Shown here: positions 23,265-63,865 of the stretch, piece after piece
Numbering within the stretch: position 1 is the first letter of the stretch
Layout of the letters: each line of letters begins with the position of its first letter
Virus record (IMG/VR): IMGVR_UViG_3300036715_004471
Coordinates: 248,001-312,000 of that record
DNA length: 64,000 bases
Strand: one strand, 5' to 3'
The notes under the pieces: model-generated
Seen by the model: only the letters and a program-made list of their open reading frames with translations
Told to the model about the DNA's origin: nothing
The model's database searches: none
Made by a program: the position numbers and the translations under genes

Positions 23265-24272
23265 TTAATCCTTATCTAAATGATCTATGTCACTTGGATC
23301 GTAAGTTTGATGACCATTCAACACATTGATTAACCTAGATATTATCTCTACATCTTCTGGATAAGTAACATCTATTATTACTTTTTGAGATCCTACACCA
23401 TTAACACCTAGGTTAGGTATCTTTATTTCATCTTTGTTTCTAGAACAAGGGGGAATTATTAATTCTTTTTCTCCCATAATGGTTTTTACTTGAACATTAA
23501 TACCCTGTAACGCATCTAGAAAAGATAGATTTAAGTGTGAAACAACATCTTGTCCTTCCAACGATAATCCTTCTTCTGGAATAACTGTTAAATGAAGGTG
23601 TGCTTCTGAATATTGATCCATGCCCATAAAGCTATTAACATAATGTCCAAAACCATTCAGCCTCAAAATGTTTCCTGACACTACGCCAGGTGGCACATTG
23701 ACACTTCCAGAAACCTGAGTACTAATAGTACCTTTCGATGAACAAGTGCGACATTGATTAATAGGGATTCTTCCAAAACATTTATCACATGTCCTGGTAA
23801 ACATCATGTTTCCCTGTTTACCAATAATTTGCCCTTTTCCTCCACACTTATCACATCCATTATTAGATTGTATCTGTCCTTGACCATTACAATCTGCACA
23901 CTTACCATTTCTGGTAAAAGAAATTTCCTTTTGACAACCCAAAATAGATTCTTTGAATGATAAGGTGATTTGAAGTACAATATGTTCTATTTGTGTCTGC
24001 TGTCTTCCTCCAAAAGGATTTATATTGATTCCAGGAAATCCTTGAAATGGATTAAACCCAGATTCTTGTATCACTGGCTCAGGATCGGTGCCTTTTCCAT
24101 TAACAACACACCGATAAGCTTCATTAATCTTTTTGAATTTATTTTCAGCACCATCTTCTTTATTAACATCAGGATGATACTTTTTAGTAAGTTCTCTATA
24201 TTTCTTTTTAGCATCTTCCGGAGAAGTTTCCGGAGATAATTCTAATATTGAATATGCTTCTTGCAAATTCAT
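23265..24272 (-). CDS. dnaJ: DnaJ chaperone (type I)
   Basis: J-domain KYHPD, G/F stretch, four CxxCxGxG-type repeats, C-terminal domain. Confidence 0.92.
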   Translation of the reverse strand: MNLQEAYSILELSPETSPEDAKKKYRELTKKYHPDVNKEDGAENKFKKINEAYRCVVNGKGTDPEPVIQESGFNPFQGFPGININPFGGRQQTQIEHIVLQITLSFKESILGCQKEISFTRNGKCADCNGQGQIQSNNGCDKCGGKGQIIGKQGNMMFTRTCDKCFGRIPINQCRTCSSKGTISTQVSGSVNVPPGVVSGNILRLNGFGHYVNSFMGMDQYSEAHLHLTVIPEEGLSLEGQDVVSHLNLSFLDALQGINVQVKTIMGEKELIIPPCSRNKDEIKIPNLGVNGVGSQKVIIDVTYPEDVEIISRLINVLNGHQTYDPSDIDHLDKD

Positions 24273-24826
24273 TTGCGTTTACCTTTAGCCTTACCTGTTA
24301 ATACAAATGCATAATACAGAGCAACGGCAATACCGTCAGCCCTATCTCTATTTTCTTCTTTTATGCCACCCTTATTCTTACCCTTAGTGATTCTCTCATA
24401 GGGAAACGTAATTCCTAAATGTTTTGCCACAAGCTCCGGCATATCTTCTTTTTTTGGCAGCACTTTAGAAGTTTTCAATCCATGTCTGATTGTCATAACA
24501 TTGAACAACCCGGGATTGGATTTCAAATAGTCATAACTAGTTAAACAAACCATACGATTGAATGTTGTCAACATTACTACAGTTGTAGCCGTACTTTTAG
24601 GCATGAATTTTATTAAATCTTCTACGCCAATATAATCTGGTTTTGATTTATTGATAATCTCCTGAATTTTATCCCTAGTATCTACTATACGATCAACTAT
24701 TGAACCTATTTTCACAGGTTTGAAATAACCCGAATCAATATACTTGATAGTGTTATCTTCTTGAATTTCTAACTCACACCATCCAATTGTCGAACTAGAC
24801 ACGTCAAAGCCAAGCACTGTCTTCAT
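24269..24826 (-). CDS. RuvC-like Holliday junction resolvase
   Basis: LGFDVSSSTIGW, IGVED, C-terminal DRADGIAVA. Confidence 0.8.
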   Translation of the reverse strand: MKTVLGFDVSSSTIGWCELEIQEDNTIKYIDSGYFKPVKIGSIVDRIVDTRDKIQEIINKSKPDYIGVEDLIKFMPKSTATTVVMLTTFNRMVCLTSYDYLKSNPGLFNVMTIRHGLKTSKVLPKKEDMPELVAKHLGITFPYERITKGKNKGGIKEENRDRADGIAVALYYAFVLTGKAKGKRK

Positions 24827-25434
24827 TTTATCTCCTTACTTTTCAAGAACGAAACAATGCTCTCTAATTCTACAAGTGTAGCATTATTTTTTATTCTGTT
24901 GGCTTTATGAGATATAACGACAATATTACCTTTAACGTATCCTTTTTCTGGAACAATACGATCCAAAGATGGCGAATCATCTTTGGTTTTTCCTACATTT
25001 GTTACAAGTAACATACCAAATATGGGACATTTACCATCGCTCGGGTAAATGTCTACTACATCTTGTTTGGTAATATCAAATATTATGCCAGAAGCTTTAG
25101 AGCGCTGTTTAGCCGAGTAATAAATAAATCTACACGGATCTTCTTGTCTTTTTTTATGTATCCATTGTTTATGAAACGCTTTGCGCTCCAGACTACTATC
25201 GTAAATACGCAGTTTTTCTTTATTCTTTTCTCTATATTCTTTATTTTTCTTACTTATATCATTTTTGTATTGTTGATAGTACTCTTTTGCTTGCGCACTT
25301 TTTGCTTCTTTCCTGCGATCATTTTGTTGACGAGCATGGGCTCGACACAAAGAACATAATTTGAAATATTCACCATTTGGCTTTGCAAATGAGGAATCAT
25401 TAAATTCTCCACGACAAGTATTACATATTCTCAT
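24823..25434 (-). CDS. HNH-variant homing-type endonuclease
   Basis: N-terminal CxxC pairs; CPIFG...SPSLDRIVPEKGYVKGNIVVISHKANRIKN. Confidence 0.75.
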   Translation of the reverse strand: MRICNTCRGEFNDSSFAKPNGEYFKLCSLCRAHARQQNDRRKEAKSAQAKEYYQQYKNDISKKNKEYREKNKEKLRIYDSSLERKAFHKQWIHKKRQEDPCRFIYYSAKQRSKASGIIFDITKQDVVDIYPSDGKCPIFGMLLVTNVGKTKDDSPSLDRIVPEKGYVKGNIVVISHKANRIKNNATLVELESIVSFLKSKEIK

Positions 25435-25486
25435 GTCTGAATGATATAATATTGGTAGAAGTTTCGGCAAATATTACTATAGGTTA

Positions 25487-25494
25487 ATATATCA
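25487..25494 (-). promoter_or_regulatory. TGATATAT putative extended -10 element
   Basis: Directly after the SSB terminator, upstream of the endonuclease-ruvC-dnaJ run. Confidence 0.45.
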
Positions 25495-25496
25495 GG

Positions 25497-25537
25497 AAAA
25501 AGAAAAAGGGGTCCTGAGTTCGCTCAGGACCCCCTTT
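25497..25537 (-). terminator. rho-independent terminator after SSB gene
   Basis: Minus strand GGGGTCCTGAG-CGAA-CTCAGGACCCC followed by TTTTTCTTTTT. Confidence 0.9.
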
Positions 25538-25557
25538 GATGTTATTGTATCAGTTGA

Positions 25558-26283: not shown

Positions 26284-26365
26284 TTTGATCTCCTACTGTT
26301 ATCTATTTTGTACAAAACGTACTTGTTTCTTTTTAACACATTGATCGTATTTACGACCTTATCAA

Positions 26366-26671: not shown

Positions 26672-26684
26672 TTTCCTATTTTTA

Positions 26685-27104
26685 TTACCAAAAAGCTTTC
26701 AAATTATTGAATCTTTTTATCAACTCTGGATCACAGAGTCCTAATGCAACATGCCTGTAATCCGCATAATCACATTCTTGATAGTTATCTGCAATTGCTA
26801 ACGTTTTGCCTTCCGAAATATCTCTTGTAAAAATTACGTTAGCGCCCCAAATACTTATGTTTTTATTGACGGTAATATTAACTTCTTCAAACATCGAAGA
26901 AACTTCTATTATTTGAATGGGATTCATTACCCAATAATCAACTACTAAGTCCCACCTATCAACTAGCATTTTGGTTTCGATTAAAAATCTTTTGAATCCC
27001 TTTTTATAATCTAATCCATTTGTATAATTATACAGAGTAATACTGTTTGTAGATTTGGTTTCGGCAGCTTCCAGCAAGATGCCGAGGTCTTTCAATACAT
27101 CCAT
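26685..27104 (-). CDS. hypothetical protein ending ...IKRFNNLKAFW
   Basis: Shared C-terminal AFW motif. Confidence 0.7.
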   Translation of the reverse strand: MDVLKDLGILLEAAETKSTNSITLYNYTNGLDYKKGFKRFLIETKMLVDRWDLVVDYWVMNPIQIIEVSSMFEEVNITVNKNISIWGANVIFTRDISEGKTLAIADNYQECDYADYRHVALGLCDPELIKRFNNLKAFW

Positions 27105-35661: not shown

Positions 35662-36327
35662 TTACCCGCACAGTATAGATTTTAGACTTTTTTCGTCAAG
35701 GTCATCGCCATTTTCGAAAATATAGTCAATGTTTTTAAATTGCGCTTTCCAAAATTCTTTATTTTCAGATTTTTTAGTTAGAATCTCTTTCAAATCTGAA
35801 AAGTAAAGTCTTTTCTTTTGGAAAAGAGCATGAGAAACTAAAACAACTGCTTCCCAATGTTGTTGAACCTCATAATGAGTTTCTTTAATTAACTTTTTTT
35901 TGAGATTATATCTTTTTCTGCCTGGTGTTGCTAATTGTTTAATCAACGCCGCAGCAGCCATAGTATCACTTGATGATCCATTTTTCCAAAATCCGGGAAA
36001 TTTATCGGATCCTGAAACATTTTTAAAATGATACTTTTCGGCAATCAAACCTGCGTAATTAACACAGATATCTGATTTCATTAATTGTTTTGATAGCTCA
36101 GAATCTTCTACTTCCATGGCTATTGGATAGTTAAAATGTGTAAAACCACATATTCTTTTTGATTTCTTATCTTCAAAAATATGCACCATATTAACCTTCA
36201 TATAGTGCAATAGCCCATAAATCGTATGACCAGCCTCATGATAAGCGGTAGATATCAATTCATGTGTGTGAGTGACTTTCTTTCTAATATTTTCTATGGA
36301 TCCTGAGCTATTAGCAGTCATATTCAC
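35662..36327 (-). CDS. stand-alone M41 (FtsH-protease-like) zinc metallopeptidase domain
   Basis: TAYHEAGH (HEXXH), YAGLIAE, GSSSD (cf. FtsH GASND). Confidence 0.75.
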   Translation of the reverse strand: MNMTANSSGSIENIRKKVTHTHELISTAYHEAGHTIYGLLHYMKVNMVHIFEDKKSKRICGFTHFNYPIAMEVEDSELSKQLMKSDICVNYAGLIAEKYHFKNVSGSDKFPGFWKNGSSSDTMAAAALIKQLATPGRKRYNLKKKLIKETHYEVQQHWEAVVLVSHALFQKKRLYFSDLKEILTKKSENKEFWKAQFKNIDYIFENGDDLDEKSLKSILCG

Positions 36328-36855: not shown

Positions 36856-37773
36856 TTATTCTTTCTTATTAAAATCAGATTCCCATATTGAAACGATATT
36901 ATACTTGGCATTTTTTAATGCCAACTCTCTGTCTACTGTTTTTTTATATAAACTACCAAAAGTTTTTTTAACTGTAAGATTCATTTTTTGTGAATCATAT
37001 TTTTTAGGATTACCATGCCAATAATCTCCATAAAACTCATAAATAGTATTAGTATTAAAGTCAAAAGCATCTACTATATAATTTTTACCATTAATCTTGA
37101 TAGTTTTATGTCTGAATTCTTCAGGAACAGATAAACTATCTAACCATTTAATTTCTGCTTTAGATATTAAATGGTTACATGTCGGGCAACCTTGTCCACA
37201 TAAATGTTTTACTGGTTGTTGCGAAAACAAACCATGTTTTTTACATGCGATCAATACTTTATCAAAAGAATTAGAATAAACAACCTTAGAGTAATCATAT
37301 TTATTATCATGAATGACAGATGCTTGATCAATAAATTCCTTAGTACTTTTAGATAACTTATTTTTTATTGATTGTATTGCGCAAGTAAAACATCCTTTAC
37401 CAAGAAGATGATTTTGTGGTGTTTGATTAAACTCGCCATGAATTAAACAAATTATTATTATTTTAGTATGATTATTTTTGTAATTGACTTTAGAATAATC
37501 ATATTTTTTATCATGCACTATTATGGATTGATCTACAAAATTTTTAAAACCTAATGATCTTGTAGTATTGCTACTTAATTTACCACATTTTGGACAACCT
37601 TGTCCACATAAATGATTGGTTGGAGATTGTTCGAATATACCATGTATATTACATATAATACTAACCTTAGTATGAGAATCTTTAAATACAACTTTTGTAT
37701 AATTAAAAGTATTTCCGTGTTTTAATTGGGCTTTTTTAATAAAACGTAACTCTTTAGTATCTATTTTAGACAT
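36856..37773 (-). CDS. free-standing homing-type endonuclease (three zinc repeats plus Vsr-like domain)
   Basis: Same architecture as 15830-16732; YEFYGDYWHGNP...SIWESDF. Confidence 0.78.
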   Translation of the reverse strand: MSKIDTKELRFIKKAQLKHGNTFNYTKVVFKDSHTKVSIICNIHGIFEQSPTNHLCGQGCPKCGKLSSNTTRSLGFKNFVDQSIIVHDKKYDYSKVNYKNNHTKIIIICLIHGEFNQTPQNHLLGKGCFTCAIQSIKNKLSKSTKEFIDQASVIHDNKYDYSKVVYSNSFDKVLIACKKHGLFSQQPVKHLCGQGCPTCNHLISKAEIKWLDSLSVPEEFRHKTIKINGKNYIVDAFDFNTNTIYEFYGDYWHGNPKKYDSQKMNLTVKKTFGSLYKKTVDRELALKNAKYNIVSIWESDFNKKE

Positions 37774-38152: not shown

Positions 38153-39400
38153 TTATTCAACAATATTAATCTTCTTAGCGATGAAATCCAATGCGTATTC
38201 ATCTTTGATTCTAGAGAATAGAATTTGTAAATAACCAGTTCTATTCATCTCTTTAATTGCATTATCTACTGAATCTTTTGTTTGAGTTTTCATTAAATTC
38301 TGTTTGATGACTTCAAACACTTCTTGATCTGTAATTTGTGCATCTAGTTCAGATTCTCTTACTTTATCCAAGATAAGAGCCAATTTTACATTTTTTTCTG
38401 CAATTTCAATGTATCTTTGTTTATCTTCTTCTGCCATGGCGTCCCAATCAGCCTTAGCATTATGTACTAAGTATTGAGCCTCTGACAAACTTAACCAATT
38501 TGGAACAGTGAAGTTATTATCAGCTACCAAACGAGCAGAAATAGCCTCTATGATTTGCATTTTGAAATTATTTGTCATTCTAGTCATTGACATACCATTG
38601 ACATGCTCTCTTAATTCTGCAAAATCTTTCTTGCCTAATTTGTGCGCCAGAGTATCATCTAATGGACACGGCTCCGTTTTTGAACCCATATTCAAAGTGA
38701 CTTTGAAATGAAGAGTCTTGCCAGCTAAAGATGGTAAACCATGTTCTGGAACTACCAAATCAAATTCTCTAGTTTCTCCCAATGTCATACCAACCAAACT
38801 GTCATCAAAATTCATTAATTGGCTGCGACCAACAGTTAACATCTCACCTTCGGCGGAAAGATTGTTAATCTTTTTTCCGTCGAGAGTTCCCTCATAGTCT
38901 ATAATGATATTGTCGCCAGGTTGAACCGTGTCACTTTCGGTATATGGAGAGACTTCACCAAACTTAACTCTAAGTTCTTGAAGTAACTTTTCGGCAAAAT
39001 CAACTTCTGTAGTATCAGAGTGTGGTTTTGGAATATCCATTCCCACATAAGAAGCTAATGTAAAATCTGGCTTAACATGAATTTCAAATTCACATGTGAA
39101 TTTGCCATCTGCCATCAAAACAGACTTAAACAGAGGGGCGCCGTGTGGTCTTAATTTCTTTTCGAAAATGGTATTGTGATACGCATCTTCTGCTAAACCT
39201 CTTTTTAGAGACTCTTCTATTTGGGATCTATAATGCATCTTAATAGCATCTAAAGATCCTTTACCGGGTCTAAATCCGGGAACAGGAGCTTTCTTAAAAG
39301 CTTGTAGAACTTGACCACGTTTGTCTAGAATTTCTCCAGCATCAGCCACATATTGTATGCTTAACTTGCATGACTCTAGCTCTTTAACTTCGATTTCCAT
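38153..39400 (-). CDS. tig: trigger factor
   Basis: Ribosome-binding loop VPGFRPGK, FKBP-like domain (GDNIIIDYEG), C-terminal domain; AGAGGA before ATG 39400. Confidence 0.92.
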   Translation of the reverse strand: MEIEVKELESCKLSIQYVADAGEILDKRGQVLQAFKKAPVPGFRPGKGSLDAIKMHYRSQIEESLKRGLAEDAYHNTIFEKKLRPHGAPLFKSVLMADGKFTCEFEIHVKPDFTLASYVGMDIPKPHSDTTEVDFAEKLLQELRVKFGEVSPYTESDTVQPGDNIIIDYEGTLDGKKINNLSAEGEMLTVGRSQLMNFDDSLVGMTLGETREFDLVVPEHGLPSLAGKTLHFKVTLNMGSKTEPCPLDDTLAHKLGKKDFAELREHVNGMSMTRMTNNFKMQIIEAISARLVADNNFTVPNWLSLSEAQYLVHNAKADWDAMAEEDKQRYIEIAEKNVKLALILDKVRESELDAQITDQEVFEVIKQNLMKTQTKDSVDNAIKEMNRTGYLQILFSRIKDEYALDFIAKKINIVE

Positions 39401-39427
39401 ATTTCCTCTTACCAAAATGTCTTTAAC

Positions 39428-40281: not shown

Positions 40282-41037
40282 TCAATGATAAACGAAATCA
40301 TTTACAATAAAATTATTCATAATGTTTAAACAAATAGTATTGTCATCTCCACACAAATATTGACAATTTGACATAAATGACAAATTATTAATTTCATTAG
40401 CAGTAAAATTTCTTTTTATTTGTTTACCTTTCATAGAATGAAAATCATAACAGCATAATAAATACTTATTATGTGTTAAAGGCATTATGTGATAAGTATC
40501 ATTTACATAATTTTTATCCCTCACGGAATAGATAATACTATCTGGACAAATTAATAGTTCATCTGTAGTTTTGATAAAATAATGATTGTGTTGCATATTA
40601 TAATAAAATATTGGAAAAAGTGCACGAATCAAACTATCAATAGTTTGATTTCTTATCATTTTGTCCTTAAAATTCTTCTTATTTCTTTTTAGGGCAGCAT
40701 CTAAATTATTTGGATTTCTACATATATTCATAGCTATGTATGTAGCCATGATCTTTTTTTCGTTATCTTCATTTATAAGATAACTTGATGATTTGATTCC
40801 TTCTAAAAAAGTATTAAAACTACATTCACATTTAGTAAACTCATTTTCTAATGATTTAAAAATTGATTTTTTTGTGCGATTCATACTCTCAGTAGAATAC
40901 TTCTTATCACTCCACCTATTTGATTTATTTTTATCCCAAAGATATAATTCTGTTTTTCTACAAGATTGAGCGGGTGTTTTAGAGAATTTAGAGGATCGTC
41001 TACATTCTACATGATGTGCATCAATAAGTTTATTCAT
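40282..41037 (-). CDS. hypothetical protein, DUF4238-like
   Basis: N-terminal HHV, LYLWDK, LENEF..CE, ICRNP, ICPDS loosely fit DUF4238. Confidence 0.4.
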   Translation of the reverse strand: MNKLIDAHHVECRRSSKFSKTPAQSCRKTELYLWDKNKSNRWSDKKYSTESMNRTKKSIFKSLENEFTKCECSFNTFLEGIKSSSYLINEDNEKKIMATYIAMNICRNPNNLDAALKRNKKNFKDKMIRNQTIDSLIRALFPIFYYNMQHNHYFIKTTDELLICPDSIIYSVRDKNYVNDTYHIMPLTHNKYLLCCYDFHSMKGKQIKRNFTANEINNLSFMSNCQYLCGDDNTICLNIMNNFIVNDFVYH

Positions 41038-41702
41038 CTTCTATTACCATCAATTATATTCTGTTTAGCCGAGTACGGTCTTAAGTTTTCTAATGCCCAA
41101 CATTTCTTAAAATTGTCGTCTTCCATAGAAGTATACATAAATTTTGAATGAGGAACAATATGATCAATTTGCCATGTCCAAGTAGACTGATCATCGTCTT
41201 TCCATTTATCTACACAATAAATACCATAATTGTTCCATGACATCCAAGATTCGAATTGTTTCTCTAAATGTTTTTTTAATTCATCAATTGAATATTGTAA
41301 AAATCTAAAAAATGATTGTCTATTCTTCTTGATACAAGAACGAATATTAGAAGATATACTTTCTTTCATTCTAAAAATTGAATCATTGCTGCGACGTGTA
41401 TATGTATTCTTTTTAACACGAGCCTTTACAGCTTCTTTATTATTTTGATACCATTGTTTCTTTGTATTTGAATCTTGTTCTTTATTTAATGCATGATATT
41501 TAGTTTGCTTAATAGCAATAGATTTTCTATTTTTTTCTTTATACTTGTGCGATTTTTTGTTCAGCCTATCTTTATCGCAATCTTTGCAAGTCTTATACCA
41601 ATATGAGCACAAGACTCCATTTCTTTTATTGCTGCCTTGAGAAAAATTATCTATTGTTAATTGCTTACTAAGAAGACAAACCTTACATATTTGAAATTCC
41701 AT
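41034..41702 (-). CDS. HNH homing-type endonuclease
   Basis: ELKKHLEKQF..WMSWNNYG, WQIDHIVP, LENLRPYSAKQN; N-terminal CxxC pairs. Confidence 0.85.
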   Translation of the reverse strand: MEFQICKVCLLSKQLTIDNFSQGSNKRNGVLCSYWYKTCKDCDKDRLNKKSHKYKEKNRKSIAIKQTKYHALNKEQDSNTKKQWYQNNKEAVKARVKKNTYTRRSNDSIFRMKESISSNIRSCIKKNRQSFFRFLQYSIDELKKHLEKQFESWMSWNNYGIYCVDKWKDDDQSTWTWQIDHIVPHSKFMYTSMEDDNFKKCWALENLRPYSAKQNIIDGNRR

Positions 41703-46761: not shown

Positions 46762-47378
46762 GGTACGTAATCTTTTATACTTTCTTTGAGTTGATCAACT
46801 ACTGAACGTAAAGCTTCATTATTAAGATTGTGCTTCGCATTTATAGTGTCATATACCATGCAGATATCTTCGATAAATGTACGTGATTTTTCATCATTAT
46901 TAAGTTGTCTAAAACTTCGTACACCATTTGAGAAATTCAACATAATCTCTAATTTTTCAGAGAAGTTATCCCTATCAATCACAACGGCATCTTCATCAGA
47001 ATCAGACTTAAAAATATCCAATATCTTGTATGCCGCTTTTACTCTAGATATTTTGTCCATGTTGGATACAAAATCACAACATCTTACCCCTGTTTTGCAA
47101 CCAAAACACCAAAAACTATTTGTTTGTGGATAAAAATAAAAGGAGGGCGAATTTTCTCGTCCTCCTTTATGAGATGAAAAGGGGCAGATTACTTTTCTAT
47201 TCTGTTCATCTAGCCTTAAACCATACAATTTAAATAGTTTAGTTAGGGGAACTGAATCTGCCCTTTTGATTAAGTCTTGGTAAAACTTCTTTCCTGCAAC
47301 AGTTTCTGAAGAGTTTCCATAATACCGAGATGTTTCGCTATCGCTAACGGATCCTGAACTATCTGATAATTTGTACAT
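46746..47378 (-). CDS. CHC2 (DnaG-type) zinc-binding domain plus unknown helical domain
   Basis: CPFSSH...NSPSF......FWCFGC...DFV. Confidence 0.85.
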   Translation of the reverse strand: MYKLSDSSGSVSDSETSRYYGNSSETVAGKKFYQDLIKRADSVPLTKLFKLYGLRLDEQNRKVICPFSSHKGGRENSPSFYFYPQTNSFWCFGCKTGVRCCDFVSNMDKISRVKAAYKILDIFKSDSDEDAVVIDRDNFSEKLEIMLNFSNGVRSFRQLNNDEKSRTFIEDICMVYDTINAKHNLNNEALRSVVDQLKESIKDYVPCPML

Positions 47379-47956: not shown

Positions 47957-48298
47957 TTATTTCTTTACCTTAGGCGGAGCCAAAGTAACTGCAATAAATC
48001 TATCTACTTGCTCTGTTTGATACTTAGGTGAAACCGCAGTTTCTAATGCAGGTAATGCGGATGTAGCCTTAGTCAAAGCAGTTAAATGAAGTTTTGATGG
48101 ATCAATAAGAACTTGCTTATAATACAAGTGTACAAATTGATTATCCAACGCAAACATTTCTAACTTAAGATTCTTTATCTCATCCCAAATTTTATCAGCA
48201 TCAGACTTAACGGGAGCGGCAGGTGCAGGTGCCGGTGCCACTACAACAGGTGTTTCTACAACAGGGGCGACGACTTTTTTCTTAGCTTTCTTATCCAT
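47957..48298 (-). CDS. hypothetical protein
   Basis: Pro/Ala-rich N-terminus; GGAG upstream. Confidence 0.7.
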   Translation of the reverse strand: MDKKAKKKVVAPVVETPVVVAPAPAPAAPVKSDADKIWDEIKNLKLEMFALDNQFVHLYYKQVLIDPSKLHLTALTKATSALPALETAVSPKYQTEQVDRFIAVTLAPPKVKK

Positions 48299-48614
48299 TT
48301 ATATCTCCTATAGAATCACATATATCAGCAAACGCTTTCCTCAGCGCACTAGTTAAAATCAACCCGTTAATTCTACGTAATTCTTTTCCATTATTTAATA
48401 TGATAATAGTTGGAATAGATGTTACGTTGAATCTTTTACAAAAAACCTTGAAAAAATCCACATCAACGGCAAAAAACCCCATATCCTTGTACTTCTCTTC
48501 CATCTTGGAAAGCATGCTCATCATTTTTTTATGATGAGGCATCCATGAGGAATAAAAATACAAAGACTGGAGTCCTGTAATTATTATGTCTTTTTCTTGA
48601 GTTAAGAAAATCAT
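48291..48614 (-). CDS. thioredoxin-fold protein lacking both active-site cysteines
   Basis: YFYSSWMPHHK at the WCGPCK position; VDVD, SIPT cis-Pro loop, GKELRRING. Confidence 0.8.
   Translation of the reverse strand: MIFLTQEKDIIITGLQSLYFYSSWMPHHKKMMSMLSKMEEKYKDMGFFAVDVDFFKVFCKRFNVTSIPTIIILNNGKELRRINGLILTSALRKAFADICDSIGDING
48320..48327 (-). promoter_or_regulatory. TGATATAT putative extended -10 element in the 3' end of the thioredoxin-like gene
   Basis: About 20 nt upstream of the next start. Confidence 0.35.
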
Positions 48615-48858: not shown

Positions 48859-49389
48859 TTACTTAGTGCAACATTTTTTATATTTCTTACCAGAACCACA
48901 AATACATGGTTCATTGGGTCCAACTTTTTTTTTGGATGAAACTGTTACTACTTGGGGAGCCAAGTGATCAATAAATAGCTTACTAGTAAGATGATCTATC
49001 TCATGTTGACAAACTACGGCTATCAAACCTGTGGCTATAAAACTATGGGGATAAACTAAGTTGTTAACTATATGAACTTCTTGAAATCTAATAGTATCTT
49101 CTACTCTTCCAGGAAAAGATAAACAACCCTCCTGTCTAAAGACAGTTGGGTCATATCCTTGAGCAATTTGACAATTGATTAAATTGAAATTTAAATCTTT
49201 ATTAACTCTAACTATTGCTATGTTTTTGGCAATACCTATTTGGGGGGCTGCTAAACCTATGCCCGGAACACCTAGTTTTGCAGAATGTTCTAACTCTTTT
49301 TCCAGAATAGAAACTAATTCTCCAACTTCATCTAGTACAACATCATCACACTTTACTCGAAGTAAATCTTCGTTATTCTTTATGATCAT
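48859..49389 (-). CDS. def: peptide deformylase with C-terminal SEC-C motif
   Basis: GIGLAAPQIG, EGCLSFPG, QHEIDHL; tail KVGPNEPCICGSGKKYKKCC. Confidence 0.93.
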   Translation of the reverse strand: MIIKNNEDLLRVKCDDVVLDEVGELVSILEKELEHSAKLGVPGIGLAAPQIGIAKNIAIVRVNKDLNFNLINCQIAQGYDPTVFRQEGCLSFPGRVEDTIRFQEVHIVNNLVYPHSFIATGLIAVVCQHEIDHLTSKLFIDHLAPQVVTVSSKKKVGPNEPCICGSGKKYKKCCTK

Positions 49390-52935: not shown

Positions 52936-53280
52936 TTATTCTGCTTGAGAATCTTTTCTAGAGGAAGATCTTGGTTTATTTGAGTTTAATTCCATTATCT
53001 TTCTTTTCATCTCATTGCGCTTCCTTCTCCTCTTTTGAGAAGGTTTTTCATATGTCTGCCTTTCTTTATAAGCAGACAAAATTCTTTCTTTTTGCACCAA
53101 AGCCCTAAAAGCACGAAGAGCTTTGTCAAAATTGTTATTGTAAACTCTAACTTCTAATGGTTGAGCGAGAACTGCTTCGTTCTCTTTTGAATCATGGCTA
53201 ACGATTTCACCTCCTTTTTGAGCCTTTTTGAAGGTTTTTCCGCTTTTCTTAAATCCACTATCTTTTGACATAACTATCAA
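52936..53280 (-). CDS. rpsU: ribosomal protein bS21 with N- and C-terminal extensions (start 53280 or 53271)
   Basis: VRVYNNNFDKALRAF...ERQTYEKPSQKRRRKR. Confidence 0.88.
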   Translation of the reverse strand: MIVMSKDSGFKKSGKTFKKAQKGGEIVSHDSKENEAVLAQPLEVRVYNNNFDKALRAFRALVQKERILSAYKERQTYEKPSQKRRRKRNEMKRKIMELNSNKPRSSSRKDSQAE

Positions 53281-53293: not shown

Positions 53294-54610
53294 TCACTTG
53301 AAATACTTATCTGTGTCCACTATCTTACTGGCGTTAAGAATATTTTTATCCTTAACTAAACAACTCAAGGCACTTTCTATGTCTTTTTCTGTTGGAGCCT
53401 TACGATTATGAGCTAAAGCCTCAAACATTGCCGAAATATAAAGTTCCTTTAAGTAAGCATAAGAAAACGCTGACTTCTCTGCAAACTTAGCTAGTTCTCG
53501 ACACTTCTTAACAGACAAGAGTGCTCCGAACCATCTCTTAAGATATATATAAGCCATTTCTTGGTTTGGAAGAGGAATTTCGAATTTTCTATCAAATCTA
53601 GATGGTCTATCAGTAATATTAGATTTTAATTTCTTAACATCATTGGCTGTCGCAATAACTAACAAACCATTTTTTGCAGAAATACCATCCATCAAATTCA
53701 AAAACGAAGAAATATCTACATTCTTTTCTAACATAGAATCCAAATCCTCAAAATACAATAATGAGGGGCTTTGTTCTTCTGCATAAGAAAAGGCTTCTCT
53801 TACCGCCTCGTCATTTGCTCCAGGAACAATAGTAACTGGTTTGAAATTGTATAAAGACATAACTGTCTTTATAATAGATGTTTTACCGTTACCTGGTTTG
53901 CCATATAACAAAATACCACGCTTCCAAGGTATTTTGTTATCTATGTAAAACTGTTTAGAAGCCAAAAAATTCTCTACCAAATTCTTTAATTCATTCTTGA
54001 TACTATCAGGTAAGAATAGTCCATCCCAAGTATGATCTTTGGTATATGGCACATCTTCACCATCAACAACCCTAATATGAAGATTACTTCTATCTCTACT
54101 CTGAACCCATTTATCAAATGAATTTCTCAGAGCAACATATCCTTCATAATTTTTATTTGAACACACAACAAAGAAACTTACTTCATCTTCTTGTTGGTTT
54201 CCCTTATGAAATAAAGCGGCATGAATGAATTCTAAATTCTTATGCTTGATCAAGAAGACACCTTGAACGAAGAACTTTTCAAAATCATGCTCCGTTTGCC
54301 AAGAGATAATAGAATCTTTATACAAACATTCTACCTTGATATCGCTTTCCTCGCAAAATTTCATGAATTGACCATCAATAATAATTCTATTATGAATGTA
54401 TCTATTTATTCCTACAGTATCTTTGAGAGCAGATTTGAAATTATCCTCCACCCATTTCATTAGATCAATAAAATTAGCAGTAGGTCTCGTGTCCTCCAAC
54501 TTATTGAATAAGCCACTATCCATTAGAGCTAATAATTTCTCTTTAGATAGATGTTCTTGGCTTTCCAAATCAGAAGGGGTTAAGTAGTCTTTATTTTCTT
54601 TGACACTCAT
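53294..54610 (-). CDS. AAA+ ATPase (BCS1-like) with unknown N-terminal domain
   Basis: RGILLYGKPGNGKT, LYFEDLD, LNLMDG, DRPSRFDR. Confidence 0.88.
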   Translation of the reverse strand: MSVKENKDYLTPSDLESQEHLSKEKLLALMDSGLFNKLEDTRPTANFIDLMKWVEDNFKSALKDTVGINRYIHNRIIIDGQFMKFCEESDIKVECLYKDSIISWQTEHDFEKFFVQGVFLIKHKNLEFIHAALFHKGNQQEDEVSFFVVCSNKNYEGYVALRNSFDKWVQSRDRSNLHIRVVDGEDVPYTKDHTWDGLFLPDSIKNELKNLVENFLASKQFYIDNKIPWKRGILLYGKPGNGKTSIIKTVMSLYNFKPVTIVPGANDEAVREAFSYAEEQSPSLLYFEDLDSMLEKNVDISSFLNLMDGISAKNGLLVIATANDVKKLKSNITDRPSRFDRKFEIPLPNQEMAYIYLKRWFGALLSVKKCRELAKFAEKSAFSYAYLKELYISAMFEALAHNRKAPTEKDIESALSCLVKDKNILNASKIVDTDKYFK

Positions 54611-61578: not shown

Positions 61579-61607
61579 ACACTATAATGGTACATTATTG
61601 CTAACCA

Positions 61608-62330
61608 TTATAATTCTGGATAATTATCCAATAACTTCTTAATTTCTTGACATTTAACAATTGAAAATTGGTTGTTTTCTCTAACTCCAGATTCCATATC
61701 TATATAATATGGTATTTCATCTGAATTTTCTTTTTCAATCAATTTAACAATTTTGACCACATTATCTGGTTTTATTCCACCAGCAAAACCAGTAAAAATA
61801 TCTGGGTCAGGAGGCGCTACTTGTTCAATTTCTCTTCCAAACCCACCAGACGAATCATTTAACCAGGAAAGAGATATCTCTCCTGTCGCTTGCATACGCT
61901 CCAAAAAGACTTCATTAAACTTCTTTTTAGTTCCGTTTTTTTGCAAAATGATACAATAGTTGTATTTCGAAGCCACTCTCAAGATGGAATTTGATAGTTG
62001 TTTGTGATCAGTATACTTCTTAATATTCAAATTCAATTGAATACGATTTGACTTATCACACAATTCCAAAACATGTAGATCTTCTATCAAAAATCTGTCT
62101 ATAGAAGATCCACATAAATGGATAGAATGGTAAACTTTATTTTCATCTGCCCAAGATAAGAATTTCTTACAAAGATCATGACCCGGGTATCTAGTATGAG
62201 TATCATTCTTAGAATCACTGTATAGAACACTAAATTCATAAGGAACATTAGCGTCCTTAAATTCCAATAGATCCTCAAATTTTGTTTGACGGTCTACTCC
62301 AACAAATGATACTAAAACTAGATTTTTCAT
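61608..62330 (-). CDS. TrpF/PRAI-like TIM-barrel protein
   Basis: HLCG, RIQLN, DSSGGFG, FAGGIKPDNV, IDMESGVR. Confidence 0.65.
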   Translation of the reverse strand: MKNLVLVSFVGVDRQTKFEDLLEFKDANVPYEFSVLYSDSKNDTHTRYPGHDLCKKFLSWADENKVYHSIHLCGSSIDRFLIEDLHVLELCDKSNRIQLNLNIKKYTDHKQLSNSILRVASKYNYCIILQKNGTKKKFNEVFLERMQATGEISLSWLNDSSGGFGREIEQVAPPDPDIFTGFAGGIKPDNVVKIVKLIEKENSDEIPYYIDMESGVRENNQFSIVKCQEIKKLLDNYPEL

Positions 62331-62911
62331 AAAACCTCGTCAATTATTCCATATTCTAATGCTTGTTTGACATCCAACCAAACATCTCTTGTACAATCTT
62401 GTTTAATCTTTTCTAATGGGTGACCAGTGTGTTTTGCCAACATCTTCATAATATTATCATTATTGTCTTTTAAAAATTGATAATAGTTCTTTGAATTAGT
62501 CATATCATGACCGGGGATTGGGAATCCGGCTTGAATACCATGAATCATGATTTTAGAATGTTTGAAAGCACATCTTTCTCCAGGAGTGCCTGCGGCTAAA
62601 ATTACTGCTGCCGCAGAATAACATTTACCCAAACAAACTGTTCTTACAGGAGATTTAATCATTTGCATGACGTCGTAAATATTGGTTAGCCCAGCAGCAT
62701 CACCACCATTACAATGTAAGTAGATAGATATTTCTTCGTCAGAAACATTATCATAATACAACAATAAAGCGGCAAGATCAGAAGCAGACTGCTTAGTCAC
62801 ATTCTCATTCAAAAAGATAATTCTATCCTTAGATAGTTTAATATAAGTTTCTGCATATCCAGGAAACTTAGGAGGCATTGCGTGCGCATGTTCGTTAAAA
62901 TTGATTGACAT
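62327..62911 (-). CDS. clpP: ClpP peptidase, catalytic triad intact
   Basis: CLGKCYSAAA (Ser), IMIHG (His), TRDVW (Asp); AAAGG before ATG 62911. Confidence 0.92.
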   Translation of the reverse strand: MSINFNEHAHAMPPKFPGYAETYIKLSKDRIIFLNENVTKQSASDLAALLLYYDNVSDEEISIYLHCNGGDAAGLTNIYDVMQMIKSPVRTVCLGKCYSAAAVILAAGTPGERCAFKHSKIMIHGIQAGFPIPGHDMTNSKNYYQFLKDNNDNIMKMLAKHTGHPLEKIKQDCTRDVWLDVKQALEYGIIDEVL

Positions 62912-62924
62912 GAAACAATACCTT

Positions 62925-63509
62925 TCACTTATTGAAGGAAACAACTTTATCAATCAAACCATATTTGGCTGCTTGATGGCAAGTCATAAACACTCTTCTA
63001 TTAAAATCTTCTGTTACTTGTTTATAAGTCTTACCAGAAGTTTTGGCAATGATTTCCATCATTTTTTTGTTGTCTCCCATAAACTGGTCTAGAACTTTTT
63101 TGGCGTCTGTTAAATCTGAATAATTAACCCAATCGTGAGTCAATTGATTAATGGCAATTACCGAATTTTTCGTAGCAAATCTCATACCGGGAGTGCCCGC
63201 ACACAGAATGAGTGCAGCTTCATCCATCGCAGATCCAATACACACAGTTTCGATGGGTGCTTGTACTAAACACATCATGTCATAAACCATGAGGACATTT
63301 CTAATGTCACCGCCTTCTGAATTTATGAAAAGAGTTATTTTAGTATTAGGATCTTCTGCATCCTTCAAAAGCAAAGTGGCTACAATATCTGTAGCCAATT
63401 TATCATCTATCACATCACAAACAAATAATATTCTATCATTTGAAAGCTTTTGATAGATATCAATAGGGATATCCCCATGCTCCGTAGCTTCTGTTACAAG
63501 AGTATTCAA
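62925..63509 (-). CDS. ClpP-like subunit lacking the catalytic triad (ClpR-like)
   Basis: CIGSAMDEAA (Ser to Asp), IAINQ (His to Asn), NRRVF (Asp to Arg); INSEGG retained; TTG start. Confidence 0.88.
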   Translation of the reverse strand: MNTLVTEATEHGDIPIDIYQKLSNDRILFVCDVIDDKLATDIVATLLLKDAEDPNTKITLFINSEGGDIRNVLMVYDMMCLVQAPIETVCIGSAMDEAALILCAGTPGMRFATKNSVIAINQLTHDWVNYSDLTDAKKVLDQFMGDNKKMMEIIAKTSGKTYKQVTEDFNRRVFMTCHQAAKYGLIDKVVSFNK

Positions 63510-63511
63510 AA

Positions 63512-63865
63512 TTAAGCTCTCTTTCTTTGTTTTACTTCGGCTTCTCTTTCTTCAGCACACAAAACGCAGGTTTCAAAACAAGGATTTGTTAATAACCTTT
63601 TTTCAGGGATATCATCATCACAATCCTCGCACAAACCATAAGTATTACTTTCAATCTTCCTTAGAGCATTGTTTATTAATGCAACTTTAGCCAAGTCTCT
63701 TGACGATAATTGATTGGCTATTTCAATCAGCAAATTGCCCTGAACCTCATCGGTTTCGTCGCCATCAGTGTCTATATCTGGCAGTTGATTTGCTTTAATT
63801 AATAACTCATTCTTTTGATTTTGTAAATCGTTTTTTATTTGTTGCAAGAAATCTTTATTTTTCAT
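63512..63865 (-). CDS. dksA: DksA/TraR C4 zinc-finger RNAP-binding protein
   Basis: Coiled coil with DETDEV tip; ALRKIESNTYGLCEDC...RL..NP...CVLC. Confidence 0.88.
   Translation of the reverse strand: MKNKDFLQQIKNDLQNQKNELLIKANQLPDIDTDGDETDEVQGNLLIEIANQLSSRDLAKVALINNALRKIESNTYGLCEDCDDDIPEKRLLTNPCFETCVLCAEEREAEVKQRKRA

What the first reader, a model, noticed from the sequence alone, without database searches (positions are those of the whole stretch)
23265..63865. A distributed phage toolkit covering a protein's life from initiation to degradation
Seen in one window: bS21, PDF-SEC-C, trigger factor with intact GFRxGK, DnaJ, Cys-less thioredoxin, AAA ATPase, M41 peptidase, ClpP and ClpR-like, DksA, and a variant nucleotidyltransferase. 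Many are altered (fusion, truncation, dead site) rather than plain host copies. Known: several occur singly in large phages. Inference: a parallel proteostasis pathway that favours phage products, with the AFW tag as a possible address label.
Basis: inference. Interest (0 to 1): 0.7.

Follow-up and report, generated by a model that had tools for sequence, protein, structure and literature searches.

The report
Huge-phage ribosome and protein-quality gene set
A 447-kb uncultivated phage, like every relative examined, carries altered copies of bacterial genes that act on ribosomes, new proteins and protein breakdown, and many of its small proteins end in one shared tail motif whose role is unknown.

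Summary
Ten of the eleven listed genes are in the stated range and in the stated condition. They are bS21 with an N-terminal extension, a PDF-SEC-C fusion, trigger factor, a full DnaJ, a thioredoxin fold without CXXC, a YjoB-like AAA+ ATPase, a stand-alone FtsH-type M41 peptidase domain, an active ClpP next to a triad-less ClpR-like paralog, and a short DksA/TraR protein. The nucleotidyltransferase lies outside the range, at 12311-13084.

All ten genes are present and collinear in 11 related phage records, at 43-95% amino-acid identity. Catalytic motifs are kept, or lost, in the same way in every relative. The genome also encodes MetAP and RF2. It lacks Hsp70, GroEL, and ClpX/ClpA-type unfoldases. 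I therefore read the set as plug-ins that redirect host machines, not as a parallel pathway.

The 'AFW tag' is real and broader than described: Φ-x-[KR]-Φ-x-[KN]-[LM]-K-A-F-[LWI]-COOH. It ends 3-9% of ORFs against about 0.2% expected, and it sits on small soluble proteins with unrelated bodies. In IMG/VR its exact form ended ORFs only on contigs of this clade. No toolkit protein carries it, and nothing links it to the proteases. The toolkit is a new variant of a known kind. The tag is the more surprising part.

The parts
23265..24272 (-). Type I DnaJ (J domain with HPD, Gly/Phe-rich stretch, 4x CXXC zinc centre, DnaJ_C)
   Evidence: Pfam DnaJ_C E 8e-19, DnaJ E 2e-15, DnaJ_CXXCXGXG E 1e-5. HPD and the four CXXC motifs are conserved in 5 orthologs. 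No Hsp70 in the genome.
35662..36327 (-). Stand-alone FtsH-type (M41) zinc peptidase domain, 221 aa, without AAA or membrane parts
   Evidence: Pfam M41 E 4e-7. A profile of 6 orthologs hits the E. coli FtsH protease domain, E 2e-4. AF2 model pLDDT 87; top PDB matches are FtsH, YME1, AFG3L2 and FtsHi, E 1e-5 to 1e-3, TM 0.5-0.58. HEAGH and the AE(K) Glu are invariant.
38153..39415 (-). Trigger factor (N, FKBP and C domains). The true start is probably the Met at 39400 (MEIEV...).
   Evidence: Pfam Trigger_N E 3e-20, FKBP_C E 1e-6, Trigger_C E 4e-8. GFRPGK is identical in four of six sequences (GCRPGK and GFREGK in the other two). Best PDB matches are Vibrio and E. coli TF, E 2e-23 and 2e-21. 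Over 1,300 homologs; the best 120 are 60-92% identical, on contigs up to 467 kb.
48291..48614 (-). Thioredoxin-fold protein without the CXXC redox site
   Evidence: Pfam Thioredoxin E 2e-12. WMP[HFY]H replaces WCGPC in all 6 orthologs.
48859..49389 (-). Peptide deformylase fused to a C-terminal SEC-C zinc motif
   Evidence: Pfam Pep_deformylase E 3e-26 and SEC-C E 3e-8. The three catalytic motifs and the C.C...KKCC motif are conserved in 6 orthologs. Nearly all of the 120 best database relatives carry PF02810.
52936..53280 (-). Ribosomal protein bS21 with a Lys-rich N-terminal extension of about 40 aa
   Evidence: Pfam Ribosomal_S21 E 8e-16 at residues 43-95. The extension is conserved in 4 orthologs. 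PDB bS21 matches E 2e-6.
53294..54610 (-). Classic-clade AAA+ ATPase with an N-terminal domain of about 200 aa (YjoB-like architecture)
   Evidence: Pfam AAA E 7e-19. Best PDB match is B. subtilis YjoB 7w42, E 6e-35, of similar length, followed by VCP/Cdc48 D2 domains; FtsH is not among the top matches. Walker A is GKPGNGKT and Walker B is LLYFEDLD.
62327..62953 (-). ClpP with an intact Ser-His-Asp triad. The likely start is the Met at 62911.
   Evidence: Pfam CLP_protease E 2e-47. Ser and His are conserved in all orthologs; Asp is conserved in 3 of 4 and is Glu-like in G006.
62925..63509 (-). ClpR-like paralog that has lost all three catalytic residues
   Evidence: Pfam CLP_protease E 2e-46. 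Ser->Asp/Asn, His->Asn/Ser/Thr/Gly and Asp->Arg/Lys in all 4 orthologs, which are otherwise 57-81% identical. 35% identical to the neighbouring ClpP. PDB matches are ordinary ClpPs, E about 1e-33.
63512..63865 (-). Short DksA/TraR-family C4 zinc-finger protein (an RNA polymerase secondary-channel factor by family)
   Evidence: Pfam zf-dskA_traR E 2e-6. The GDE[TF]D[EL][VI]Q tip and the CxxC...CxxC finger are conserved.
26685..27104 (-). Tag-bearing 139-aa ORF (...NNLKAFW) whose body resembles a fragment of the phage's own capsid-like protein
   Evidence: C-terminus. The G003 and G002 ORFs in the same slot keep the tag while the body is 21-38% identical. phmmer E 6e-4 to 2e-3 to the 337-aa capsid-like protein of three genomes. 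Atlas structure TM 0.6-0.7 to HK97-type capsid proteins.
20755..21385 (-). Two tandem tag-bearing ORFs (146 aa and 61 aa), both ending EIVRKLK[IM][RK]AFW. They lie just outside the stated range.
   Evidence: Within this pair, only the 61-aa ORF has a match, in G002 and G012. No Pfam match for the 146-aa ORF.
12311..13084 (-). Short class II (CCA-adding / poly(A) polymerase type) nucleotidyltransferase head domain. This is the probable 'variant nucleotidyltransferase', and it lies outside the stated range.
   Evidence: Pfam PolyA_pol E 8e-14. GGTPRD...DLD and RDFTCNA motifs; 257 aa.

Best explanation
The window lies in the conserved replication and early-middle core block of a 446.5-kb phage. 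The phage belongs to a large lineage of roughly 350-490-kb phages known only from metagenomes. Old, diverged copies of cellular genes are scattered through this block and fixed in the lineage. They act at three points.

(1) The ribosome and its exit tunnel. These genes are bS21 with a basic N-terminal extension, peptide deformylase carrying a SEC-C zinc knuckle in place of the usual C-terminal end, and trigger factor. A methionine aminopeptidase and an RF2 lie elsewhere in the genome.

(2) Folding. A complete DnaJ is present without any Hsp70.

(3) Breakdown or remodelling. These genes are an active ClpP with an inactive ClpR-like partner, a soluble FtsH-type peptidase domain, and a YjoB-like AAA+ ATPase.

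The most likely mode of action is a set of separate plug-ins, not one self-contained pathway. The phage supplies the parts that give specificity or capacity: a ribosomal protein, nascent-chain enzymes, a J-protein and a protease core. The host supplies the engines: ribosomes, DnaK, and Clp unfoldases.

Shown here: the presence of the genes, their domain make-up, their active or dead sites, their conservation across the clade, and the absence of the engines from the phage genome.

Inferred from what the families do: binding to host ribosomes, recruitment of host DnaK, formation of a mixed ClpP/ClpR ring, and any bias toward phage products.

The C-terminal motif is a real, peptide-level, clade-restricted signal on small soluble proteins. 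Its receptor is unknown. Its connection with the toolkit is not established.
For: - Gene identities and motifs.
- Phage context: a 446,541-bp virus record rated 100% complete; portal and large terminase in the same window; 56 tRNAs.
- Clade-wide collinear conservation of all ten genes in 11 related records at 43-95% identity.
- Trigger factor in 13 of 14 terminase-selected records and in two more reached through the tag search.
- PDF-SEC-C and trigger factor each have over 1,000 database relatives, on contigs up to 492 kb.
- MetAP and RF2 are present and conserved in both complete relatives.
- No Hsp70, Cpn60, EF-Tu-type GTPase, ClpS, SecB or S41 peptidase was found, and the only AAA_2 hit does not look like ClpX or ClpA.
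- The toolkit genes sit co-directionally among RecA, Pol III alpha, SbcCD, primase and topoisomerase genes, with only one strong terminator-like hairpin in about 40 kb.
- Tag statistics, codon variation and clade restriction.
Against: - No expression, interaction or host data exist. No RNA run was listed.
- Conservation of the toolkit is no stronger than that of neighbouring replication genes, so it does not show that the genes work together or on phage products.
- The phage has three classic AAA+ ATPases. One of them could replace a host unfoldase, which would make the protease arm more autonomous than I assume.
- ClpP-family proteins serve as prohead proteases in some phages, so the ClpP/ClpR pair may belong to capsid maturation instead.
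- The host is unknown.
Confidence: 0.6

Rival explanations
1. One reading: the genes form one parallel, phage-owned proteostasis pathway from initiation to degradation. The pathway prefers phage products, and the C-terminal AFW-type motif is the address that sends proteins to the phage protease.
For: - All parts are fixed together in the clade.
- The motif is strongly enriched, restricted to the C-terminus, and selected at the peptide level.
- Its exact KLKAFW-stop form ended ORFs only on contigs with clade homologs among 2.9 million IMG/VR contigs.
- From my own knowledge: basic residues followed by a hydrophobic C-terminal end loosely recall ClpX C-terminal degrons (ssrA LAA, MuA RRKKAI) and the nonpolar tails recognised by FtsH.
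Against: - Hsp70, GroEL, elongation factors and Clp unfoldases are absent.
- DksA is a transcription factor.
- No toolkit or structural protein carries the motif.
- Co-conservation is shared with all core genes.
- Tag number varies threefold between genomes (22, 22, 65) that carry the same toolkit.
- The one complex prediction gave no answer, which is neither support nor evidence against.
Confidence: 0.1
2. A morphogenesis reading. ClpP/ClpR, and possibly the M41 domain, AAA+ ATPase, DnaJ and trigger factor, serve assembly and maturation of a very large capsid. The C-terminal motif is a capsid-loading peptide that packs many small proteins into the head for ejection with the DNA.
For: - The portal and terminase are in the same window.
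- One tagged ORF is a fragment-like relative of the phage's capsid-like protein.
- Tagged proteins are small and soluble: 1 of 105 has a membrane-like stretch, against 11-12% of other small ORFs.
- From my own knowledge: short C-terminal peptides load cargo into HK97-fold shells. Examples are encapsulin cargo-loading peptides, the C-terminal tail of the HK97 protease, and the basic C-terminal helix of the P22 scaffolding protein.
- The jumbo-phage review PMC7824862 ties most conserved phage peptidases to virion maturation and proposes BCS1-like AAA+ ATPases for loading proteins into heads.
Against: - ClpP here is a full-length canonical ClpP (E 2e-47). It sits next to a DksA-like gene, about 55 kb from the portal gene and over 70 kb from the capsid-like gene.
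- Neither ClpP nor ClpR carries the tag.
- No virion proteome exists.
- The capsid-like protein itself ends ...VVIGA, without the motif.
Confidence: 0.2
3. The genes are host DNA: recent passengers, or a mis-assembled or proviral host segment, with no phage function.
For: IMG/VR classes the record as 'provirus'. In GenBank 'phage' records, most trigger-factor hits lie on short or unannotated records that look like bacterial contamination.
Against: - The genes are interleaved with phage replication genes on one strand, at uniform G+C of about 34%.
- They are collinear in 11 independent assemblies at 43-95% identity.
- They are only distantly related to cellular homologs: trigger factor scores 86 bits against Vibrio TF.
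- The alterations are identical in all relatives.
Confidence: 0.02

Closest known systems
Translation-related gene sets of huge phages (Al-Shayeb et al. 2020, PMC7162821)
   Same: bS21 with basic N-terminal extensions, PDF, release factors, many tRNAs and CCA-adding enzymes are reported there as means to intercept host translation. A PDF-SEC-C fusion also occurs in LR745206.1, a 634,780-bp uncultured-phage record in GenBank.
   Different: That paper does not mention trigger factor, chaperones or Clp proteases (0 occurrences). None of the 15 jumbo-phage papers listed by my search mentions trigger factor. The terminase of this clade is only about 24% identical to any GenBank phage. Here the exit-tunnel trio PDF, MetAP and TF is fixed together.
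Phage-encoded bS21 (Mizuno et al. 2019, cited in PMC7162821; Chen et al. 2022, PMC9723584)
   Same: A single S21 domain carried by a large phage, proposed to replace host bS21 and favour phage mRNAs.
   Different: No expression data exist here. The extension is about 40 residues and conserved across the clade. The host is unknown.
Cyanophage peptide deformylase (Frank et al. 2013, cited in PMC7162821)
   Same: A catalytically intact PDF carried by a phage.
   Different: Here the usual C-terminal end is replaced by a SEC-C zinc motif in the whole clade. In SecA this motif binds SecB and, by published reports I recall, ribosomes. That is a lead, not a test.
ClpP/ClpR mixed protease cores of cyanobacteria and plastids (my own knowledge)
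   Same: An active ClpP is encoded next to a paralog that has lost Ser, His and Asp yet stays well conserved.
   Different: The phage ClpR-like protein matches ordinary bacterial ClpPs, and no ClpR entry stands out, so the loss is probably independent. Ring composition and the partner unfoldase are untested. ClpP alone is known in some jumbo phages (PMC7824862).
FtsH (M41 AAA+ zinc protease) and B. subtilis YjoB
   Same: The 221-aa protein has the FtsH protease-domain fold and zinc ligands. The AAA+ ATPase has the length and layout of YjoB.
   Different: The peptidase has no AAA module and no membrane anchor. The AAA+ gene lies 17 kb away and is not FtsH-like by best match, so 'split FtsH' is not supported.
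Phage J-domain proteins (RB43 Rki; DnaJ in 'moraphages', PMC12619734; sporadic DnaJ in jumbo phages, PMC7824862)
   Same: A phage J-protein without a phage Hsp70, expected to recruit host DnaK.
   Different: This is a full type I DnaJ with zinc centre and C-terminal domains, fixed in the clade. It is not a bare J domain or a recent host copy.
C-terminal sorting or degradation peptides: ssrA and ClpX C-motifs, encapsulin cargo-loading peptides, MinD-type amphipathic membrane helices (my own knowledge)
   Same: A short motif at the extreme C-terminus, shared by otherwise unrelated proteins.
   Different: The sequence Φ-x-[KR]-Φ-x-[KN]-[LM]-K-A-F-[LWI] matches none of them. A full-text search for the peptide strings found nothing relevant. 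No receptor was identified.

Membership tests
Trigger factor | Three-domain layout (ribosome-binding N domain, FKBP PPIase, C domain) | tested here: met
   Pfam Trigger_N, FKBP_C and Trigger_C are all above their cut-offs. PDB TF matches run over residues 5-360.
Trigger factor | GFRxGxxP-type ribosome-binding signature | tested here: met
   GFRPGK in the window and three of five orthologs; GCRPGK in G007 and GFREGK in G004. The trailing Pro of the E. coli motif is not kept.
Trigger factor | Binding to uL23 at the ribosomal exit | not testable with these tools
   Needs co-sedimentation or cryo-EM with host ribosomes.
Peptide deformylase | Motifs GxGxAAxQ, EGCLS and HExxH | tested here: met
   GIGLAAPQ, EGCLS and HEIDH are conserved in 6 orthologs.
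SEC-C motif | CxC...(K)xxCC/CH zinc-binding end | tested here: met
   CICGSGKKYKKCC; Pfam SEC-C E 3e-8; conserved in 6 orthologs.
Ribosomal protein bS21 | S21 domain | tested here: met
   Pfam E 8e-16. PDB bS21 chains E 2e-6. Incorporation into 30S subunits was not tested.
Type I DnaJ | J domain with HPD, zinc centre with four CXXC motifs, and C-terminal domains | tested here: met
   The third and fourth zinc motifs depart from CXXCXGXG, and the Pfam zinc-domain score (25.8 bits) is below its cut-off of 32.7.
ClpP (S14 peptidase) | Ser-His-Asp catalytic triad | tested here: met
   For 62327-62953: YSAA, MIHG and TRDVW align with the E. coli triad positions.
ClpP (S14 peptidase) | Ser-His-Asp catalytic triad (second copy, 62925-63509) | tested here: not met
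   Asp/Asn, Asn/Ser/Thr/Gly and Arg/Lys occupy the three positions in all 4 orthologs. The fold is kept (Pfam E 2e-46).
ClpR (inactive Clp core subunit) | Triad lost while the protein stays conserved and is encoded beside an active ClpP | tested here: met
ClpR (inactive Clp core subunit) | Assembles into mixed rings with ClpP; descends from cyanobacterial or plastid ClpR | tested here: inconclusive
   PDB matches are generic ClpPs. A genome-contig scan found no relative. Ring assembly is not testable here.
FtsH | M41 protease domain with HEXXH and a third zinc ligand (Glu) | tested here: met
FtsH | Covalently linked AAA module and N-terminal membrane anchor | tested here: not met
   The protein is 221 aa and consists of the protease domain only.
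Thioredoxin | CXXC (WCGPC) redox site | tested here: not met
   WMP[HFY]H in all 6 orthologs. Only the fold matches (Pfam E 2e-12).
DksA/TraR | C4 zinc finger and an acidic DxxDxA-type tip on a coiled coil | tested here: met
   zf-dskA_traR E 2e-6. DETDEV and CxxC...CxxC are conserved. The coiled coil is short (117 aa in all). Binding to RNA polymerase was not tested.
AAA+ classic clade | Walker A, Walker B and an arginine finger in the second region of homology | tested here: met
   GKPGNGKT, LLYFEDLD and RPSRFDR. Pfam AAA E 7e-19.
Class II nucleotidyltransferase (CCA-adding / poly(A) polymerase) | GGxxRD...DxD head motif and RDFTxNA | tested here: met
   Window 12311-13084. The body and tail domains are missing (257 aa), and the gene lies outside the finding's range.

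The most novel reading that the evidence does not exclude
The C-terminal motif Φ-x-[KR]-Φ-x-[KN]-[LM]-K-A-F-[LWI]-COOH is a lineage-specific protein-addressing signal. Dozens of otherwise unrelated small phage proteins (3-9% of all ORFs) would be delivered by it to one shared receptor. That receptor could be the phage ClpP/ClpR, M41 or AAA+ machinery, for timed removal. It could equally be the procapsid, for packaging and ejection. In either case a phage would run its own sorting code alongside its ribosome and chaperone plug-ins.
Probability: 0.3. Interest if true: 0.85.

Novelty: new variant of a known kind. Interest (0 to 1): 0.62.

Why it matters
Huge phages are already known to carry translation genes. 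This lineage goes further. It fixes the three factors that first meet a nascent chain at the ribosomal exit: deformylase, methionine aminopeptidase and trigger factor. It adds a J-protein and a mixed active/inactive Clp core, and it omits the ATP-driven engines.

That pattern gives a concrete, testable picture of takeover: the phage re-aims host machines through small specificity parts. Trigger factor is absent from the jumbo-phage papers my search listed, and bona fide GenBank phages do not appear to carry it. The lineage is abundant in mat, sediment and lake metagenomes, so the material for tests exists.

The shared C-terminal motif is the least expected part. If it is a sorting signal, it would be a simple handle for finding which phage proteins share a fate, and a portable tag for experiments.

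Tried and rejected
- Complex prediction of a 61-aa tagged protein against ClpP, ClpR-like and the AAA+ N-domain: no answer, score 0.02. This is neither support nor evidence against binding.
- AlphaFold2 on the tagged 139-aa ORF with 3 sequences: unusable, pLDDT 34.
- Pfam and PHROGs on ten tagged ORFs: nothing significant.
- Atlas look-ups of two other tagged ORFs: nothing usable.
- Homolog search with a tagged MORN-variant-like ORF: only three close relatives.
- Full-text search for the motif strings: nothing relevant.
- A DNA-level explanation of the tag (a repeat, terminator or promoter overlapping ORF ends): rejected. Lys, Ala and Phe codons vary, and the DNA after the stop is not conserved.
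- 'The tag marks unusually variable genes': rejected for G000 and G003, where 40-45% of tagged and 40-45% of untagged small ORFs have homologs in the other genomes. It holds only weakly for G008 (13% against 29%).
- 'Split FtsH' (AAA+ plus M41): not supported. The best AAA+ match is YjoB, then VCP, and the genes lie 17 kb apart.
- Descent of the ClpR-like gene from cyanobacterial ClpR: the genome-contig scan found no relative, and PDB matches are generic.
- RNA evidence: none was listed.
- Sigma-70-type promoter scan: no enrichment, 99 against 85±9 and 78 against 83±9. Transcription units could not be drawn.
- PHROGs on ten unnamed ORFs in the range found no nucleotidyltransferase.
- The 'moraphage' lineage (PMC12619734) was considered as the identity of this clade and rejected. 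That paper reports DnaJ/DnaK but has no mention of trigger factor, deformylase, ClpP or S21.

Full report
**What the window is.** The 64-kb window is positions 248,001-312,000 of a single 446,541-bp virus record rated 100% complete. Nearly all genes lie on the minus strand, and G+C is about 34%. The window holds a portal gene (5530-7377, PHROG portal E 2e-52) and a large terminase (7438-9318). Further along is a long co-directional block of replication and recombination genes. These are RecA, Pol III alpha, a PD-(D/E)XK nuclease, SbcC/SbcD, a primase split into two genes, topoisomerase IA, an FtsK-like ATPase, an MT-A70 methylase and HNH nucleases. The whole genome has 56 tRNA genes and no tmRNA. 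The phage occurs in microbial-mat, sediment and lake metagenomes.

**Checking the observation.**
- DnaJ (23265-24272) has the J domain with HPD, a Gly/Phe-rich stretch, four CXXC motifs and the C-terminal domains.
- The M41 protein (35662-36327) is only 221 aa. It has HEAGH and the downstream Glu that serves as third zinc ligand in FtsH, but no AAA module or membrane anchor.
- Trigger factor (38153-39415) has all three domains and GFRPGK.
- The thioredoxin-fold protein (48291-48614) reads WMPHH where WCGPC should be.
- Peptide deformylase (48859-49389) keeps GIGLAAPQ, EGCLS and HEIDH, and ends in a SEC-C motif, CICGSGKKYKKCC.
- bS21 (52936-53280) has its S21 domain at residues 43-95, behind a Lys-rich extension.
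- The AAA+ ATPase (53294-54610) has intact Walker A and B motifs and an arginine finger.
- ClpP (62327-62953) keeps Ser, His and Asp.
- The overlapping upstream paralog (62925-63509) has Asp, Asn and Arg at those three positions.
- The DksA/TraR-like protein (63512-63865) has a DETDEV tip and a C4 zinc finger.
- The only nucleotidyltransferase I found is a 257-aa PolyA_pol head-domain protein at 12311-13084, outside the stated range.

**Extra checks on two proteins.** A profile of six orthologs of the M41-like protein matches the protease domain of E. coli FtsH (E 2e-4). An AlphaFold2 model (pLDDT 87, pTM 0.85) finds FtsH, YME1, AFG3L2 and FtsHi protease domains in all but one of its 50 best PDB matches. 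Nearly the whole length aligns (E 1e-5 to 9e-3, TM 0.42-0.58 by the model's length). It is therefore a soluble FtsH-type peptidase domain. The best solved relative of the AAA+ ATPase is B. subtilis YjoB (E 6e-35), which has a similar length and layout. VCP/Cdc48 domains follow, and FtsH is not among the top matches. Reading the two genes as a split FtsH is not supported.

**Relatives and co-occurrence.** A scan of IMG/VR with trigger factor returned seven loci at 57-100% identity. A scan with an alignment of the large terminase returned 215 related stretches. The best 80 were at least 69% identical, on contigs up to 448 kb. I fetched two complete relatives (G003, 433 kb; G008, 448 kb) and the syntenic region of nine more records, then compared all window ORFs with them by tblastn.

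All ten toolkit genes are present in every record that covers the region. They are in the same order, at 43-95% amino-acid identity. Trigger factor is found in 13 of 14 large records chosen by terminase alone. The 14th has its terminase only about 10 kb from one contig end, so the region would lie beyond that end. Trigger factor and PDF-SEC-C each have over 1,000 relatives in the 5.8-billion-protein collection, on contigs up to 467 kb and 492 kb.

Alignments of orthologs show that each active or dead site is fixed.
- All copies lack the thioredoxin CXXC.
- All keep the PDF motifs and the SEC-C cysteines.
- All keep the bS21 extension.
- All ClpR-like copies lack the whole triad, yet stay 57-81% identical.
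- All M41 copies keep HEAGH and the Glu.
- All DnaJ copies keep HPD.

However, RecA, Pol III alpha, SbcCD, the primase parts and topoisomerase are conserved in just the same way. The result shows a conserved core block under purifying selection. It does not show that these genes form one pathway.

**What else the genome has, and what it lacks.** Family searches of the whole record gave the following.
- A methionine aminopeptidase is present (155429-156238, M24 E 4e-32, metal ligands present).
- A release factor with SPF and GGQ, that is RF2-type, is present (131157-132305). Both are conserved in G003 and G008.
- There are no hits for Hsp70, Cpn60, EF-Tu-type GTPases, ClpS, SecB or S41 peptidases.
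- The one AAA_2 match is a 370-aa protein that does not look like ClpX or ClpA.

So the phage owns the three factors that first act on a nascent chain at the exit tunnel (PDF, MetAP, TF). It also owns a small-subunit protein, a J-protein and a protease core. It does not own the ATP-driven partners of the J-protein or the Clp core. This is the main reason to prefer separate plug-ins into host machines over a parallel pathway.

By family knowledge, J-proteins choose substrates for Hsp70. ClpR-type subunits change the properties of the Clp core. bS21 sits at the mRNA-binding platform. PDF and TF dock beside the exit tunnel. Each of these steps is inferred here, not shown.

**Comparison with what is known.** Al-Shayeb et al. 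(PMC7162821) reported bS21 with basic N-terminal extensions, PDF, release factors and tRNAs in huge phages, and proposed redirection of host translation. They mention neither chaperones nor Clp proteases (0 occurrences each). Trigger factor is absent from that paper and from the jumbo-phage papers listed by my search. Iyer et al. (PMC7824862) note patchy ClpP, sporadic DnaJ and BCS1-like AAA+ ATPases in jumbo phages.

In GenBank phages, most trigger-factor matches lie on short or unannotated 'phage' records that look like bacterial contamination. Two Acinetobacter records annotate a tig gene. The terminase of this clade is only about 24% identical to any GenBank phage. The PDF-SEC-C fusion is not unique to the clade. 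LR745206.1, a 634,780-bp uncultured-phage record, encodes a 183-aa PDF ending CPCGSGKKYKKCC. That record shows no trigger-factor hit.

**The 'AFW tag'.** Three ORFs in the window end in ...[KR]AFW. Genome-wide, AFW is the commonest C-terminal tripeptide (8 ORFs), followed by AFL (6). Widening the pattern to [AVC]F[WLFMVIY] gives these counts:
- G000: 22 of 683 ORFs, against 1.4 expected from composition.
- G003: 22 of 682 ORFs, against 1.4 expected.
- G008: 65 of 743 ORFs, against 1.6 expected.
- The Poisson probabilities run from about 4e-19 to 3e-79.

Across the 109 proteins the consensus spans about 11 residues: Φ-x-[KR]-Φ-x-[KN]-[LM]-K-A-F-[LWI]-COOH. In G008, KAF[LIWVM] occurs 46 times at the very end and only 5 times anywhere else in 139,000 residues.

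The codons for Lys, Ala and Phe vary, and the DNA after the stop codon is not conserved. The constraint is therefore on the peptide. With the last 12 residues removed, the 109 proteins fall into 83 BLAST clusters, of which 72 are singletons.

The tagged proteins have these properties.
- They are small, with a median length of about 95 aa.
- The ten I scanned have no Pfam match.
- They are soluble. One of 105 has a membrane-like stretch, against 11-12% of other small ORFs.
- None of the toolkit proteins carries the motif.

An exact-pattern scan of IMG/VR for K-L-K-A-F-W-stop gave 39 stretches. About 24 of them end a called ORF, and all of those lie on contigs with homologs of this clade. The six stretches with no clade homolog have no tagged ORF, which fits the number of chance matches expected. 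The motif is thus real, terminal, modular and restricted to this lineage.

**What the tag does remains open.** Three readings fit the data.
- It could be a C-terminal degron for the phage or host proteases.
- It could be a capsid-loading peptide.
- It could be a basic amphipathic helix for a membrane or another common partner.

Two observations bear on this. First, one tagged family has MORN-variant-like W-x-x-G-x-x-HRxDGPA repeats followed by SQEEFEKLLKLKAFW. Second, the tagged ORF at 26685-27104 looks like a fragment of the phage's own 337-aa capsid-like protein. phmmer gives E 6e-4 to 2e-3 to the three orthologs, with shared DRWDLV and IWG blocks. The Atlas model aligns with HK97-type capsid proteins over residues 1-128, which leaves the tag outside the aligned part. 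The ORFs in the same slot of G002 and G003 keep the tag while the body drifts to 21-38% identity. A complex prediction with ClpP, ClpR-like and the AAA+ N-domain gave no answer, and I do not count it either way.

**Verdict.** The set is real, altered as described and fixed in a large phage lineage. The evidence favours independent parts that re-aim host ribosomes, Hsp70 and Clp unfoldases over a closed pathway. The tag's role as an address for degradation is untested. As a gene set this is a new variant of a known kind. The clade-wide exit-tunnel trio, the ClpP/ClpR pair and above all the shared C-terminal motif are the parts that deserve experiments.

Noticed in passing
G000:C1:155429-156238 and G000:C1:131157-132305 (outside the window): The genome also encodes a type I methionine aminopeptidase and an RF2-type release factor (SPF and GGQ). 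Both are conserved in the two complete relatives. With PDF and trigger factor, MetAP completes the set of exit-tunnel factors.
   Followed up: partly
G000:C1:15230-15303 and 320811-320884 (tRNA-CUA); stop-codon map of the whole genome: There are two amber-suppressor-type tRNAs alongside RF2. TAG ends 43 table-11 ORFs in the first 150 kb and none between 150 and 300 kb. Two frames with an in-frame TAG align across it to relatives; one relative also has a stop at that position, and the others have Q or F. This suggests TAG read-through or recoding in part of the genome.
   Followed up: partly
window 26685-27104, and G000:C1:234204-235217: A 139-aa tag-bearing ORF resembles a fragment of the phage's own highly conserved 337-aa capsid-like protein, by sequence blocks and by Atlas structure. 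It could be a decoy, an assembly factor or a remnant. The AF2 model failed.
   Followed up: partly
L235 463-1014 (LR745206.1, 634,780-bp uncultured phage): A PDF-SEC-C fusion (183 aa, ending CPCGSGKKYKKCC) also occurs in an unrelated, unannotated huge-phage record.
   Followed up: yes
window 46746-47378 and 22134-22889: The DnaG-type primase is split. The CHC2 zinc-ribbon gene and the catalytic-core/Toprim gene lie about 24 kb apart, and both are conserved in relatives.
   Followed up: no
window 15830-16732, 36856-37773, 41034-41702, 40282-41037: DUF4379 zinc-finger and HNH-type ORFs are present in some relatives and absent or relocated in others. This is the pattern of mobile homing-endonuclease-like insertions within the core block.
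   Followed up: no
window 25504-25537, minus strand: This is the one strong terminator-like hairpin in the block (15-bp stem with 8 G-C pairs, then a T run). It lies between the SSB-like gene and the next ORF.
   Followed up: no
G000:C1:2136-3350 and 388387-389541: Two further classic AAA+ ATPases have an 'ED' Walker B. They are paralogs of each other and lack orthologs in relatives (only weak 25-29% hits to the toolkit AAA+).
   Followed up: no
G000:C1: about 20-120 kb: Long open frames are about equally frequent on both strands here, unlike the rest of the genome, which is about 80% minus strand. The same part holds most TAG 'stops'.
   Followed up: no
L188 (G000:370838-371104) and eight G008 loci (alignment A4): A tagged family has W-x-x-G-x-x-HRxDGPA repeats of the MORN-variant kind, ending in SQEEFEKLLKLKAFW. 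The tag may have spread from, or into, this family.
   Followed up: partly
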